From assembly GCA_023334545.1 (NCBI GenBank), contig JAADVB010000076.1, forward strand, positions 8,114 to 72,113: DNA of 64,000 bases, read 5' to 3'. The stretch comes from Salisapilia sapeloensis CBS 127946. Lineage: Eukaryota; Protista; Oomycota. The notes beneath the pieces were generated by a model. The model was given only the letters and a program-made list of their open reading frames with translations, searched no databases and had not been told where the DNA came from. This document shows, in pieces, positions 18,804-56,785 of this stretch (positions are counted from its first letter, which is position 1; each line of letters starts with the position of its first letter). A program made the position numbers and the translations under genes.

Positions 18804-20679
18804 CTATGTTTTAATCGACTCCCAAGGCTTTTGCGGGCGCTCCTCCCGACTCTTTTGCAGCAGATCCGACGAATCATCCGATAGTCGGTCTTCAATGTCC
18901 TTGATCCCAGGCACCTTTTCCCCGTTCTCAATCTTCTTCATAAGCTCCGAAAACGACTGAGGGTACTTTGGTTCGTCCTTTTCCTCCAGCTCTTCCTTCT
19001 CCTTCGGCTCCACAGACGTACTCTGCTGGTTGAGTCTCTCCATGAACTTGGTCAGACTGTCCGTTTCGTCTGCCTTCGCCTTCTCTTCCAACGGACTCTC
19101 CTCTGGTTTCAAGACCGACTCTTCCTCTGTTTTCGTGGGCAAAGCGGGCGTCCGGAGCGACTGGAAGTGGTTTCGAGCCACTTGTTCCATGGGCGTATCG
19201 TCATTCGAAGAGAGAGACTGGAGGCTCTTAAGAAGAGCTTGGAGGATGGACAAGTGGGCGTCCAGATCCTCCTTCGAGTGCCACGTCCATTCGAGGTTTC
19301 CATTCCGATTCTCAAACCCTATCGATCGAAGCACTTCTTCGTGATGCTACAGACTCTTGTCAGAAGTATAAAGATAGATGATAATGTAAAAAGACGTACG
19401 TGGAGTGGTTGGATCTTTTGCTTGTAGTTCACGTTCCCAGTCGCGATGCGGCGATACCGAGGAACGTCCGGATGCTACATACAAAGTGTTATGACAAGTC
19501 CGGCAATACAGCCTATGGATGCTTACCTCGGTGAGGTTCCGGACGTACATGGAGAGGATACTGGCAGCCTGCTTAACGTCCTCCAACGAGTTCTATCGTC
19601 ACCCCACGCTTTATCACAGCTATAATCCCTACTTTAACCAAAGTTTAAGCGTACCTCTGTTCTGAATCGCTTGAGAGCGTCTTCCATCTTGTCCATCTTT
19701 TGCTCCACTCCTACGACCTTGGGCGCCTCCACCTTTTCCTTTACATCCACAGCTTCATCCTCCACCTTTTCAACCTTTGTATCCTGTTTCTCCACTGCAG
19801 TCTTCTGTGGGGACGGAGCAGGAACAGAAGACTCTTCCAACACCTTTTGGAGAGCTGATACTTGTGCTTGAAGAGTTGCAATCTCCTTGGCATTGGACTA
19901 CATACGACATGAGTACCATACAAAAATACAGCGAAACAGTAGTCCTACTTGCTCCGACAGCTTCGTGTCCAACAGCGTCTGGGTCGTCAGCTGCTGCTCG
20001 GACGAATGGAGCGACTTGGAGAGAGCAGAGAGCTCCTGCGTTTGCTCCTGAATGGCAGTAGACACGCCCGTGATGGCTGTCATCAACTGCTCGTCCTCTG
20101 CCTTCATCTTCTCCTCTTCCTCCTTCACTTTTTCGTCTTCCAAACCGTACCGTGGAGACAGCCAGGGAATCCACCCATTCTCCCTCGCATAGTTCCACAC
20201 CATATTCACGACCGTCGCTGCTCCGACGATCGATGCAACAGTCGTTAGGAACTGGATGTACGGAGGCGTGTATCGCTTCGGGACTAGCTGGAAGCCAGCA
20301 GGGATGGCACCCATGCCAACTGCAGTAGCAGGTGTGGTCGCTGGCGGAGACGAGTACTGGACAGTCGCCGAGGATGGAGACGTGGAAGAAGAGGCATTCT
20401 GGTATCGCTCCAGCGCTTCCTGCACCTCTTCTTTCGTCAGACCCTTTTGCTCTAGGAACTGGATACGTTCGCTAATTGGCGTCGACTAGCATGAGCACAA
20501 GAAGGGTATTAGTCGAATGCTCACAGGAGACCAAAGCGATCTCTAGCAAGTAGAAAACAAGTCTCTTGTAGAAATAACAAGACATCCTCTTCATATCATA
20601 TCACTGAAGCTACGACAAGTACCTGGACGTTCGGGTGCTGTAGGAATTGGACCCCATTTGCCACTTGGTCCTCCCTCAT
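18804..20679 (-). CDS. PEX14: PEX14 with C-terminal PUB and KPWE (PEX39-like) domains; 6 exons, about 506 aa
   Basis: Exons 20679-20623, 20485-19949, 19897-19655, 19592-19527, 19474-19400 and 19346-18804; all five introns are GT-AG and phase 0. The product has Pex14_N 'NGVQFLQHPNVQSTPISERIQFLEQKGLTKEEV', a hydrophobic segment, a coiled coil, a PUB-like 'SILSMYVRNLTEHPDVPRYRRIATGN...LRSIGF', and 'YPQSFSELMKKIENGEKVPGIKDI...QKPWE'. Confidence 0.85.
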
Positions 20680-54590: not shown

Positions 54591-55393
54591 ATGCAAGTAC
54601 CGCAGGGTCCACTCAGCCAAAAGGCAAAGCAGAAAGATGTCAACGACCAGATGGGTCTGCATGCGGAGGACTTGAGCGCAGACAGACCGCCCAATCCGTT
54701 CCTATTCCCACGAAAGTATATTGCTCCACACGAAGATGCGGGCATCTACCCTTTCTTGCCAGCGTATCCGCCTCAGCTACTCCAGGCAGTCTATCCAAAC
54801 CCGGTCACCGAGTCATGTGTTGGCAAATTTGTCATGTCGGCAGTCATCGGTGTTTTTTATCATGAACTTGTCATACATTTTACAGTATAAACTAATGCTG
54901 TTGATAGGATATGGCATGGGCAACTTGTTCGGACTTGTGTTAGGTAGCTACGAAGGTATCACACCACCTGTGCCACTCCCAGGGCAACGAGAATTGCCCA
55001 AGGTCCCATTTAAGGAATCCGTAAGTCATAAACCAAGATACTTAGGGACGATCGAGGTATAACACACGAGATAGATGCAAGCAGCTTGGCGAACCACCGG
55101 TACAAAGTGCCGCTACTGGGGCAACAACTTCCTCGTTATTTCTGGTAGTGTACCTCATGCGTTTCACTGTCTAATTCGCTGCTAACCGATACTTTATAGC
55201 GTTGTTTTCAGGATTGGAGTGTGCAGTGGAGAAGGGTAGAGGTCGACATGACGTCGGCAACGAGCTCGTGGCCGGATGTGCCACGGGTGCAGCGCTTGCC
55301 TCTGGACAAGGATACCAAGCCCAGTGCCTCGGTTGCGTTGGCTTTGCCGCTTTCTCTTACGCCATTAACTATTTCACAGATGGCAAATTTTAG
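54591..55393 (+). CDS. TIM22: Mitochondrial inner membrane translocase TIM22 (4 exons)
   Basis: Introns 54850-54907, 55021-55074 and 55145-55199 give 'ESCVGKFVMSAVIG|YGMGNLFGLVLGS...|MQAAWRTTGTKCRYWGNNFLVIS|ALFSGLECAVEKGRGRHDVGNELVAGCATGAAL...GCVGFAAFS'. The start codon is uncertain (54591 or 54651). Confidence 0.85.
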
Positions 55394-55480
55394 ATTGCTT
55401 TCTTTTCGTAATACACTCGGAAAAGAAACGAAAATGTATCTTGTTCACAAACAGTTGGTACTGAAAGGCAACATATATTT

Positions 55481-56553
55481 CTATGTTGCCAAACTTCCGC
55501 CATCCACAAGTAGATTCACACCGTGAATGTACCTCGTCTCGTCACTCGTGAGAAACACGACGGCATTGGCAACGTCCAACGCTTTCCCACTCTCTCCCGC
55601 CGGAGTACGCGTTTGGCTTGCTGCTTGGATGCAATCTTGTTTGGAGGTGGAGTCATCGATCGAACCTGGTGCAACAGCGTTGCAGACGATCCTTTGGGAA
55701 GCATACTCGGCAGCAATCTGGCGTGTCAGGTGAACGATGGCGCTCTTACTCACACCAAAGGTGAACTGGTTCGGGTGGGCAATCATGCCGTAGAGTGACG
55801 ATACGTTCACAATGCGCCCACGAATACCGGTTTGGTCGCTAATGTCCTGTTGCAGGAACTGTTTCAAAGCGAATTTGCATGCAAAGAAAGTAGCTTTAGG
55901 TGCGATGCCCATAGCTGCGTCCCACTGTTTCTCTGTCGTCGTCATTAACGACGATGGAGGGGTATCCGATGGAATGCAGTTGATAGTAAAATCGAGTCGT
56001 TTGTGTGCAGACACGGCGGATTGCACGACCGTTTCCAAAAACGCTGGTGAGGCAAGGTCGCCTTCTTCCAACGAAACATTCTTCTCACTAGCGTCTTCAG
56101 CTGCCTTTTCCAACTGCGCTAACGTTTCCTTGTTCTCGCTACTAGCCGGGCCAGCAATGGTGACCTTGGCTCCTTCACTCGCCAATCGGAGAGCAATGAT
56201 ATGCCCCAGACCGGTCGTGCCTCCAAAGACGATGCCGACCCGATCCTTCAACCGGTTTCCACTACTCGCTGACGTCTACTCAATACATTTATTAATCACG
56301 TGTATGTGGTAATCTAGGTGCACTTATAGGTTGATAGGCAAATGAATGTGCAACGTACCGCTGATTCGACAGCTTGCGATGCTTTTTTTGCGACAGCTTC
56401 GTCGTGCTGCCGCATCGCTTGCGCGATCTCATCCGACGTCAATCCTTTCTTTTCCAGAAACTTCAGACGGTCCGACAGAGGTGTATCTTGAACTTGTGGG
56501 TGCTGCAGAAAGCGCACTCCTTGCCGAACGAGCTCCTCTCGTACTTGCCCCAT
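55481..56553 (-). CDS. Pex14_N domain fused to a short-chain dehydrogenase/reductase-fold domain (2 exons, about 329 aa)
   Basis: Exon 56553-56359 (VRFLQHPQVQDTPLSDRLKFLEKKGLTSDEI), an 83-nt GTACGT...TAG intron at 56358-56276, then an in-frame exon 56275-55481 (GIVFGGTTGLG, NVSS, FGVSK, CNAVAPG, VDGG). The SDR ORF has no upstream ATG of its own. Confidence 0.78.
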
Positions 56554-56785
56554 CGTGTTTACTTGACTTTGGATACTTGTTTGACAGAGCTCATTTAAAC
56601 TTTCTTCATTGGCTATAATTTTATTCTATTTTTCTATGATTGGCAGAAAACTGTTCGCTAGGGAACGCCGACAACGAAACTTGGACACAAAGCATTAAAC
56701 GCTCCAAGTGCTCTTCTGACCTTTGGTACAGCTCAGGAAGCAATCTCTTCGGCAATACTTTTATACAGAGACCTGCTATAGCAAT

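What the first reader, a model, noticed from the sequence alone, without database searches (positions are those of the whole stretch)
55481..56553. Soluble Pex14_N domain fused to a catalytically disabled SDR: candidate new peroxisomal import regulator or redox sensor
Seen: the 79-aa ORF (56314-56553) and the SDR ORF (55481-56251, which starts at TTG with no ATG) join in frame through an 83-nt intron. The Pex14_N part keeps both aromatic residues and the Lys of the PEX5-binding groove (VRFLQ...KFLEKKGL, compare human VKFLQ...AFLKKKGL) but has no following TM helix. The SDR keeps the Gly-rich dinucleotide loop (GGTTGLG), the Ser (NVSS) and the Lys, but the catalytic YxxxK reads FGVSK (codon TTT) and NNAG reads NCIP. 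The C-terminus (-LAT) is not a PTS1. Established: Pex14_N binds PEX5 WxxxF motifs, and Tyr-less SDR folds such as NmrA-type proteins act as NAD(P)(H) sensors. Inference: the protein could be a cofactor-sensing decoy that competes with PEX14 for PEX5, or could hitch-hike on PEX5 without a PTS. With the PEX14-PUB-KPWE gene 36 kb away, this points to an unusual peroxisomal import system and is the best candidate for an undescribed system in the window.
Basis: partly seen in the sequence, partly recalled or inferred. Interest (0 to 1): 0.85.

Follow-up and report, generated by a model that had tools for sequence, protein, structure and literature searches.

The report
Oomycete PEX14-domain/dehydrogenase-fold fusion protein
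This is a real, spliced and expressed oomycete gene that joins the receptor-binding head of the peroxisome docking protein PEX14 to a dehydrogenase-like body with a degenerate catalytic centre; the family is conserved, I found no paper on it, and it probably binds the peroxisomal import receptor, though its function is untested.

Summary
A minus-strand gene has exon 1 at 56553-56359, an 83-nt GT..AG intron, and exon 2 at 56275-55481. It encodes a 329-aa protein: a Pex14_N domain, a linker of about 20 aa, and a classical SDR fold. RNA contigs from four runs of two organisms carry exactly the 56275/56359 joint.

The same architecture occurs in Pythium, Globisporangium, Phytophthora, Nothophytophthora, Plasmopara, Peronosclerospora and an AT-rich metagenome lineage. 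The intron sits at the same domain boundary in the three loci read as DNA, and synteny is shared. Neither search found the fusion outside oomycetes.

The N-S-Y-K tetrad reads A-S-F-K here. Among 23 oomycete rows, Phe replaces Tyr in 22 and Ser or Ala replaces Asn in all 23. NNAG and PGxxxT are also changed. Gly loop, Ser, Lys and PG are kept. One relative still has Tyr, so the hydroxyl appears dispensable.

The N-domain is the best-conserved part and keeps the residues equivalent to human PEX14 Phe35, Phe52 and Lys56. There is no TM segment, PTS1 or PTS2.

Most likely it is a soluble PEX5-binding protein whose SDR body is not a canonical oxidoreductase. The decoy, hitch-hiker and redox-sensor roles remain inference. 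No literature on it was found. A note on an overlapping window of this genome had flagged the Tyr-to-Phe change.

The parts
56359..56553 (-). Exon 1: start codon ATG 56553-56551, 65 codons, Pex14_N three-helix domain plus the start of the linker
   Evidence: Pfam PF04695 E 7.4e-15. Gapless alignment to human PEX14 NTD 2W84/4BXU, E 1.3e-8. RNA contigs reach 56565 and 56599.
56276..56358 (-). 83-nt GT..AG intron exactly at the domain boundary (..VESA | TSAS..)
   Evidence: Joint 56275/56359 in RNA contigs of 4 runs from 2 organisms. An intron sits at the homologous place in Pythium oligandrum L001 and metagenome locus L002.
55481..56275 (-). Exon 2: linker plus classical SDR fold, 264 codons and stop TAG 55483-55481
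   Evidence: Pfam adh_short_C2 1.4e-42 and adh_short 7.7e-31. PDB FabG/GlcDH hits down to E 1.4e-32. AF2 model pLDDT 92.6; Foldseek TM 0.84-0.92 to ketoreductases.
56204..56224 (-). Gly-rich dinucleotide loop GGTTGLG (GxxxGxG kept; the leading Thr of TGxxxGxG is Phe/Val)
   Evidence: G18 and G24 are invariant and G22 is Gly in 85 of all 87 rows.
55745..55759 (-). FGVSK in place of YxxxK; Phe codon TTT 55759-55757, Lys AAG 55747-55745
   Evidence: Phe in 22 of 23 oomycete rows and Tyr in 63 of 64 other rows. Lys is invariant.
56560..56599 (-). Short 5' UTR seen in RNA contigs, with a small upstream ATG (56595) closed by an in-frame TAA before the main ATG
   Evidence: Contig ends at 56565 (X1) and 56599 (X3); sequence.

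Best explanation
Shown: the gene encodes a soluble 329-aa protein found, in both searches, only in oomycetes (Pythium/Phytophthora-type lineages plus two deeper ones). Its first 50 or so residues are a PEX14-type N-terminal three-helix module. This module keeps the two groove phenylalanines and the lysine that in human PEX14 clamp the WxxxF/Y motifs of the import receptor PEX5. After a linker of about 20 residues comes a well-folded classical SDR Rossmann domain whose catalytic centre has been rewritten (Asn to Ala/Ser, Tyr to Phe, NNAG to NC(I/V)P, PGxxxT to PGxIDD). The Gly loop, Ser, Lys and Pro-Gly, which mostly hold the dinucleotide, are kept.

Inferred: the N-module binds PEX5 (less likely PEX19) in the cytosol. 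The SDR body no longer performs Tyr-based hydride/proton chemistry and serves as a ligand- or dinucleotide-binding, probably oligomerising, scaffold. The protein therefore either rides into the peroxisome on PEX5 without a PTS or adjusts how much free PEX5 can dock. I cannot tell these two outcomes apart here.
For: Splice and expression. Domains. The fusion, the intron position and synteny with the WD40 and EMC5/MMgT neighbours are conserved in Pythium oligandrum; the fusion, the intron position and the WD40 neighbour are conserved in a 37.6% GC metagenome lineage. The N-domain is the most constrained part: window versus Phytophthora is 75-79% identical in the N-domain against 49-51% in the SDR, and nearly every N-domain residue, including F14, F31, K34 and K35, is invariant in 14 orthologues. 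Fusion and canonical PEX14 N-domains form reciprocal best-hit groups. Purifying selection: 31 of 40 listed differences to organism B lie at third codon positions, p = 1e-8. Active-site changes are fixed clade-wide while the bacterial relatives are canonical. The clade sits on a stem of 2.22 substitutions per site with 100/100 support. No single pocket Tyr is universal: the canonical site is Phe in 22 and Tyr in 1 row; Ser+2 is Tyr in 20, His in 2 and Val in 1; P0027 has neither. No TM, PTS1 or PTS2. Literature: the PEX14 N-domain is a three-helix bundle that binds PEX5 WxxxF/Y (PMC12925559), with Phe35 and Phe52 crucial (bioRxiv 10.1101/2025.08.01.668090). Bead-bound PEX14 PEX5-binding domain depletes PEX5 from extract (bioRxiv 10.1101/2022.05.31.494222). 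Arabidopsis PEX14N binds PEX5 independently of cargo and does not change PTS1 peptide affinity (PMC4065332), which is compatible with co-transport.
Against: No binding, localisation or cofactor data exist. The PEX5 of this organism was not examined. Ser and Lys are invariant and the substituted residues (Cys, Pro, Phe, Asp-Asp) are themselves conserved, so the pocket is under selection and could support non-canonical chemistry. One relative (L002) has Tyr at the canonical site. The residue at the end of beta2 that sets NAD/NADP preference is Asp in half of the clade and Gly in the other half, and NNAG is altered, so even dinucleotide binding is unproven. A three-residue PTS1 would be a simpler evolutionary route to mere import.
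Confidence: 0.5

Rival explanations
1. It is still an active oxidoreductase with a re-wired active site (for example the oomycete-specific Tyr two residues after the catalytic Ser, or a substrate-assisted mechanism). The Pex14_N module serves only as an unconventional peroxisome-targeting or tethering device.
For: Ser160 and Lys177 are invariant. The substrate-loop region and the substituted residues are strongly conserved. Tyr at Ser+2 occurs in 20 of 23 oomycete rows against His in 29 of the 64 other (mostly bacterial) rows. The fold is intact at pLDDT 92.6. From memory, some natural SDRs without the canonical Tyr-Ser pair, such as 2,4-dienoyl-CoA reductases, are active.
Against: Neither Tyr position is universal: P0016 and P0025 have His and P0027 has Val at Ser+2, and P0027 has Phe at the canonical site as well. 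The tetrad Asn, NNAG and the Thr of PGxxxT are all lost together. From memory, Tyr-to-Phe mutants of classical SDRs are generally inactive.
Confidence: 0.22
2. The Pex14_N module has been recruited for a partner other than PEX5 (PEX19, tubulin or an oomycete-specific protein with a diaromatic motif), so the protein has no direct role in matrix protein import.
For: Pex14_N occurs outside PEX14, in proteins made of 7-13 tandem Pex14_N repeats, for example in the labyrinthulomycete Hondaea, so the module can be redeployed. From memory, the human PEX14 N-domain also binds PEX19 and beta-tubulin through the same groove.
Against: The groove residues that contact PEX5 are invariant. The fusion's N-domain shares about as many residues with human PEX14 (22 of 48) as with the organism's own canonical PEX14 (25 of 48), and that canonical domain shares 19 of 48 with human. 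It carries basic residues at the positions equivalent to human K34 and K55, which the canonical oomycete copy lacks.
Confidence: 0.2
3. Artefact: two separate genes, or a pseudogene wrongly joined.
For: None beyond the ORF caller listing two ORFs.
Against: Spliced RNA contigs in 4 runs from 2 organisms. Exon 2 has no ATG start of its own. The architecture is conserved in more than 10 species. The third-codon bias of substitutions argues for a coding sequence under selection.
Confidence: 0.01

Closest known systems
PEX14 (peroxin 14), N-terminal PEX5/PEX19-binding domain (Pfam PF04695; human structures 2W84/2W85)
   Same: The same domain family, with a gapless alignment over about 50 residues. 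The residues equivalent to Phe35, Phe52 and Lys56 are kept, and three helices are predicted.
   Different: There is no hydrophobic membrane segment, coiled coil, PUB or KPWE region, and an SDR fold follows instead. The organism has a separate canonical PEX14 at 20679-18804. The two N-domains are distinct orthologous groups.
Classical SDRs of the FabG / glucose 1-dehydrogenase / ketoreductase type (e.g. PDB 2HQ1, 2UVD, 4JRO, 8Y7R)
   Same: 29-32% identity with E down to 1e-32 and Foldseek TM 0.84-0.92. GxxxGxG, the catalytic Ser and Lys, and the PG motif are present.
   Different: Tetrad Asn is Ala/Ser and Tyr is Phe. NNAG reads NC(I/V)P and PGxxxT reads PGxIDD. The domain scores below every curated NCBIfam cut-off (154 bits against 215 for the best family) and is fused to Pex14_N.
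Tyr-less SDR-fold regulators (NmrA, HSCARG/NMRAL1; CC3/TIP30, which binds importin-beta and inhibits nuclear import) - recalled from memory
   Same: An SDR fold without the catalytic Tyr, used for binding rather than catalysis. CC3/TIP30 is a precedent for an SDR-fold protein acting on a transport receptor.
   Different: Those are atypical/extended SDRs of other Pfam families, and no NmrA-type hit appeared here. None carries a Pex14_N module. This is an analogy only.
PTS-independent cargo that binds the PEX5 N-terminal region ('PTS3', cited in PMC8172628)
   Same: It would enter by binding the unstructured N-terminal half of PEX5 rather than the TPR domain.
   Different: Known cases use patches on the enzyme itself, not a copy of the docking protein's receptor-binding domain.

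Membership tests
Pex14_N domain family (PF04695) | Profile match above the curated gathering score | tested here: met
   54.8 bits against a cut-off of 23.2, E 7.4e-15, covering profile positions 2-45 of 46.
Pex14_N domain family (PF04695) | Three-helix bundle with two groove Phe and a Lys (human Phe35, Phe52, Lys56) | tested here: met
   Gapless alignment to 2W84 puts F15, F32 and K36 at those positions. The AF2 model of orthologue P0002 gives helices 2-16, 25-34 and 39-66 at pLDDT 70-81. These residues are invariant in 14 orthologues.
Pex14_N domain family (PF04695) | Binds PEX5 WxxxF/Y (and PEX19) peptides | not testable with these tools
   Needs ITC, pull-down or multimer modelling with the oomycete PEX5.
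PEX14 peroxin (docking-complex membrane protein) | Hydrophobic membrane segment and coiled coil after the N-domain | tested here: not met
   The maximum 19-residue hydropathy of 1.41 falls on the Rossmann beta1/Gly loop. The sequence after the linker is an SDR fold. A canonical PEX14 with such a segment and a KPWE domain lies elsewhere in the window.
Classical SDR (PF00106/PF13561) | Rossmann fold of about 250 residues with a profile match | tested here: met
   adh_short_C2 at 146 bits and adh_short at 107 bits. pLDDT 92.6, TM 0.84-0.92 to solved ketoreductases.
Classical SDR (PF00106/PF13561) | TGxxxGxG dinucleotide loop | tested here: met
   FGGTTGLG: the three Gly are kept and the leading Thr is replaced by Phe/Val across the clade.
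Classical SDR (PF00106/PF13561) | Catalytic tetrad Asn-Ser-Tyr-Lys | tested here: not met
   A125-S160-F173-K177 in the window. Among the 23 oomycete rows the Asn position is Ser in 20 and Ala in 3, and the Tyr position is Phe in 22 and Tyr in 1 (P0030, which has Ala at the Asn position). The other rows have Asn in 55 of 64 and Tyr in 63 of 64.
Classical SDR (PF00106/PF13561) | NNAG (beta4) and PGxxxT (beta6) motifs | tested here: not met
   NCIP and PGSIDD in the window. In the 23 oomycete rows Cys and Asp are invariant and Pro is present in 21.
NmrA-like / atypical SDR NAD(P)H sensors | Membership of the NmrA family profile; GxxGxxG-type loop; regulator partner binding | tested here: not met
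   No NmrA-type family among the Pfam hits at E up to 1. The loop is the classical GxxxGxG. Only the absence of the Tyr is shared.

The most novel reading that the evidence does not exclude
The protein is a previously unrecognised, oomycete-specific soluble peroxin. It would be an oligomeric SDR-fold scaffold that displays several PEX14-type heads, binds the diaromatic motifs of PEX5, and either enters the peroxisome with the receptor or gates receptor availability. Ligand or dinucleotide occupancy of the degenerate SDR pocket might tune this. It would be the first case of the docking protein's receptor-binding module being used in a soluble protein, and a lineage-specific handle on peroxisome import in major plant and animal pathogens.
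Probability: 0.3. Interest if true: 0.75.

Novelty: new variant of a known kind. Interest (0 to 1): 0.55.

Why it matters
The PEX14 N-domain is the primary PEX5-binding site of the peroxisomal import machinery, and its interaction with PEX5 is already a target for small-molecule inhibitors. A conserved, expressed, soluble copy of this module welded to a catalytically degenerate dehydrogenase fold is not part of any current import model. Its N-domain is under stronger constraint than the SDR part of the same protein. If it binds PEX5, it gives a testable example of either PTS-independent piggy-back import or receptor-level regulation. Because both searches found it only in oomycetes, it could explain lineage-specific features of their peroxisomes. 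The orthologues carry uninformative or wrong database names ('carbohydrate esterase', 'enoyl-ACP reductase', 'hypothetical protein'), and five literature searches found no paper on them.

Tried and rejected
1. Independent transcripts, or splicing to the nearer AG at 56314: rejected by the RNA contigs.
2. Phe as a sequencing error or species oddity: rejected. The RNA contigs are identical to the window, and Phe is present in 22 of 23 clade members.
3. A relocated catalytic Tyr at Ser+2: weakened, because members carry His or Val there.
4. Full-length AF2 on the shallow 14-sequence alignment of orthologue P0002 gave only pLDDT 63.9, so nothing can be said about contacts between the two domains. 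No coordinates are returned, so active-site geometry could not be inspected.
5. A search for other Pex14_N-enzyme fusions: among 75 of the closest Pex14_N proteins, only an oomycete fragment (P0148) has an SDR.
6. Literature searches for the fusion, for the UniProt/RefSeq accessions of the P. infestans, Plasmopara and Pythium orthologues, and for Pex14_N together with adh_short found nothing. The 2021 PEX comparative-genomics paper, which includes P. infestans, does not mention it.
7. The organism's name could not be established. No database protein is more than 57% identical, so its genus seems unannotated.
8. No orthologue from Saprolegnia or Aphanomyces appeared. The best Aphanomyces hit to the N-domain is canonical PEX14. 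Absence was not proven at the DNA level.
9. Bacterial origin of the SDR part is suggested, since the nearest non-oomycete relatives are bacterial at 37-42%. It was not tested against a broad eukaryotic SDR sample.

Full report
**Anatomy**

On the minus strand an ATG at 56553 opens a 65-codon exon (56553-56359). The exon is a Pfam Pex14_N domain (E 7.4e-15, 54.8 bits against a cut-off of 23.2). A GT at 56358 and an AG at 56277-56276 bound an 83-nt intron.

The second exon (56275-55481) reads on in frame for 264 codons to a TAG. It matches adh_short_C2 (1.4e-42) and adh_short (7.7e-31). The ORF caller shows only a TTG-started ORF there, because exon 2 has no start of its own. The joined product is 329 aa with a single terminal stop.

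**Transcript evidence**

I laid the assembled contigs of four RNA runs on 55100-57100. Two runs (organism A) match the window with no differing letter. Two (organism B) are about 93% identical. Every run has one contig that skips exactly 56276-56358 (CT..AC on the plus strand, that is GT..AG on the minus strand), with 176-241 letters on the shorter side.

Contigs end at 56565 and 56599, which gives a 5' UTR of 12-46 nt. A small upstream ATG at 56595 is closed by a TAA before the main ATG.

Of the 40 differences to organism B that the tool listed, 31 lie at third codon positions (binomial p = 1.3e-8). The reading frame is therefore under purifying selection.

**Conservation of the architecture**

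A search with the SDR part returned proteins of 312-345 aa that carry both PF04695 and adh_short. They come from Pythium oligandrum, P. insidiosum, Globisporangium splendens, Nothophytophthora, several Phytophthora species, Plasmopara halstedii and Peronosclerospora sorghi, at 49-57% identity. The shorter unnamed hits are probably exon-2-only gene calls on metagenome or read-assembly contigs; this was verified for one of them, P0030.

In Pythium oligandrum the gene sits beside the same WD40 and MMgT/EMC5 neighbours as in the window. Its intron is at the same place..ESV|TS.. against ..ESA|TS.. here.

The window's nearest relative in the tree, P0030, lies on a 37.6% GC metagenome contig (L002). 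That contig also has the WD40 neighbour and a Pex14_N exon, and the whole gene joins to a 329-aa fusion. It has an extra intron inside the N-domain region, and its second intron is again at ..ESV|TS...

An exhaustive phmmer search of the 65-aa exon against 1.84 billion representative proteins gave 552 hits. Among the 75 hits of 200-700 aa (out of the 150 best listed) that I scanned with Pfam, only an oomycete fragment (P0148) carries an SDR. The rest are PEX14-like proteins: KPWE in 15, PUB in 11 and PEX14-like_2nd in 8.

A word-based search with the N-domain of the Pythium protein found only fusion proteins, then an unnamed 192-aa Pex14_N fragment, then Aphanomyces stellatus canonical PEX14. 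As far as these searches see, the fusion is restricted to oomycetes of the Pythium/Phytophthora side plus two deeper lineages. It was not seen in Saprolegniales, but absence was not tested at the DNA level.

**The N-domain**

It aligns without gaps to the human PEX14 N-terminal domain (2W84, 4BXU; E 1.3e-8). Window residues F15, F32 and K36 fall on human Phe35, Phe52 and Lys56.

- Phe35 and Phe52 are described as crucial for that contact (bioRxiv 10.1101/2025.08.01.668090).
- That Lys56 also contacts the peptide is my recollection of the 2009 structural papers.

In 14 full-length orthologues almost every residue of the N-domain is invariant, including both Phe and the Lys-Lys pair. Window versus Phytophthora is 75-79% identical in this domain and 49-51% in the SDR part.

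The window also holds a canonical PEX14 gene on the minus strand. Its ATG is at 20679, an intron lies inside its Pex14_N, and it has a hydrophobic segment, a coiled coil and a KPWE domain (Pfam 5e-15). The N-domains of the fusion and of canonical PEX14 share 25 of 48 residues. Each finds its own kind first in a reciprocal BLAST, so they are two old orthologous groups.

The fusion has no TM segment, no PTS1 (C-termini read -LAT, -MAT, -MAS or -MAC), no PTS2 and no WxxxF/Y motif of its own.

**The SDR domain**

With an 87-sequence alignment AlphaFold2 gives pLDDT 92.6. Foldseek places the model among FabG-type ketoreductases and glucose dehydrogenases at TM 0.84-0.92. Sequence hits to PDB reach E 1.4e-32. 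No curated NCBIfam cut-off is reached.

I tabulated the classical SDR motifs over 23 oomycete rows and 64 other, mostly bacterial, rows. The motif definitions are recalled from the Persson/Kallberg classification.

| Feature | Oomycete rows (23) | Other rows (64) |
|---|---|---|
| Gly loop, Gly 1 and 3 | invariant | invariant |
| Gly loop, Gly 2 | Gly 22, Ala 1 | Gly 63, Arg 1 |
| Catalytic Ser | invariant | Ser 63, Thr 1 |
| Catalytic Lys | invariant | invariant |
| Pro-Gly | invariant | present in 63 |
| Tetrad Asn | Ser 20, Ala 3 (Ala in the window) | Asn 55 |
| Tetrad Tyr | Phe 22, Tyr 1 | Tyr 63 |
| NNAG | N-C-(V/I)-(P, or A in 2) | second Asn in 53, Ala in all 64 |
| Thr of PGxxxT | Asp 23 | Thr 58 |
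| Residue at Ser+2 | Tyr 20, His 2, Val 1 | His 29 |
| End of beta2 (NAD/NADP preference) | Asp 11, Gly 11, Glu 1 | Asp 31, Gly 17 |

The one Tyr at the canonical site is in P0030, the L002 lineage, whose other changes are the same as in the rest of the clade. The position therefore toggles between Phe and Tyr. The simplest reading is that the ring matters and the hydroxyl does not.

The oomycete-specific Tyr at Ser+2 cannot be a universal substitute. P0027 has no Tyr at either position.

The residue at the end of beta2 is split evenly between Asp and Gly within the clade, which does not fit a finely tuned cofactor sensor.

In a maximum-likelihood tree the 25 oomycete rows form one clade (100/100). 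It sits on a stem of 2.22 substitutions per site from bacterial 'glucose 1-dehydrogenase'-like relatives, and its internal branches are short. This is the pattern of a burst of change followed by constraint.

**Interpretation**

Shown:
- a real, expressed, conserved, soluble two-domain protein;
- an intact PEX14-type groove;
- an intact SDR fold with a non-canonical centre.

Inferred: the N-module binds PEX5.
- A bead-bound PEX14 PEX5-binding domain depletes PEX5 from Xenopus extract, and the lumenal PEX14 domain holds PEX5 inside the organelle (bioRxiv 10.1101/2022.05.31.494222).
- Arabidopsis PEX14N binds PEX5 independently of cargo and does not change its affinity for a PTS1 peptide (PMC4065332).
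- A cytosolic protein with this head would therefore be expected to sit on PEX5, whether or not the receptor is loaded.

Whether the consequence is co-import or modulation of docking cannot be decided here. A simple need for import would more easily be met by a PTS1, which slightly favours a role tied to the receptor itself.

The SDR body most likely no longer carries out Tyr-dependent redox chemistry. The conservation of its pocket says it still binds something. Classical SDRs are usually dimers or tetramers (general knowledge), which would make the protein multivalent for PEX5; this was not tested.

I put 0.5 on this reading, 0.22 on a still-active re-wired enzyme and 0.2 on a partner other than PEX5.

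Its sequence observations are all correct and its two sequence-level refutation tests come out in its favour. Its functional proposals remain hypotheses.

Its argument from the neighbouring PEX14 gene does not hold. That gene is the ordinary docking protein, and KPWE and PUB regions are common among Pex14_N proteins. I could confirm KPWE but not PUB in the ORF pieces of this gene. The NmrA comparison is an analogy, not membership.

**Novelty**

The orthologues are in public databases under automatic or misleading names. I found no paper on them. It is a new variant built from two known modules, not a new kind of system. An earlier first-stage note on an overlapping window of the same genome (s1-297869) had already flagged the Tyr-to-Phe change.

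Noticed in passing
window 18804-20679, minus strand: The organism's canonical PEX14 gene. ATG at 20679 and a 19-codon first exon. An intron of about 138 nt (20622 to about 20485) lies inside the Pex14_N domain, whereas the fusion gene has none there. There follow a hydrophobic segment, a coiled coil, and a last ORF ending in a KPWE domain (Pfam 5e-15). A PUB domain was not detected in the ORF pieces scanned.
   Followed up: partly
proteins P0121-P0125: Some proteins consist of many tandem Pex14_N repeats. Hondaea fermentalgiana GBG28837.1 has 2200 aa and 11 matched stretches. Unnamed metagenome proteins of 595-1794 aa have 7-13 repeats. This shows that Pex14_N is reused outside PEX14; their function is unknown.
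   Followed up: partly
protein P0269: Legionella antarctica BCA96633.1 is a 4261-aa protein named by UniRef as protein-kinase-domain-containing. It gives 18 weak Pex14_N-like stretches (25% identity, E 1e-5). It may be a eukaryote-like repeat in a giant Legionella protein.
   Followed up: no
L002:2596-3741 (JGI metagenome contig, 37.6% GC): A deep-branching relative of the fusion gene has two introns and keeps Tyr at the canonical catalytic position (..SYGVTK..). It shares all the other active-site changes. It would be a useful natural control for experiments.
   Followed up: yes
window 55100-55400, plus strand: A convergent plus-strand gene has a 55-nt GT..AG intron (55144-55198). Its transcript overlaps the 3' end of the fusion gene, so the RNA assemblers merged the two transcripts into one contig. 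I did not identify the gene.
   Followed up: no
protein P0009: A 452-aa 'metaclust' protein reads MIF (PF01187) + Pex14_N + SDR, with an internal Met exactly where the fusion normally starts. It is probably a merged transcript or ORF rather than a true three-domain protein.
   Followed up: no
tree: The nearest non-oomycete relatives of the SDR part are bacterial (37-42% identity), and no other eukaryote lies nearer among the best 120 hits listed. This hints at a bacterial origin of the SDR exon before fusion. It was not tested against a broad eukaryotic SDR sample.
   Followed up: partly
window 56723-58048 (+) and 58090-58628: The WD40-repeat gene with a long acidic tail and the EMC5/MMgT gene next to the fusion keep the same order in Pythium oligandrum. 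The WD40 neighbour is also kept in L002. This marks a conserved micro-syntenic block.
   Followed up: partly
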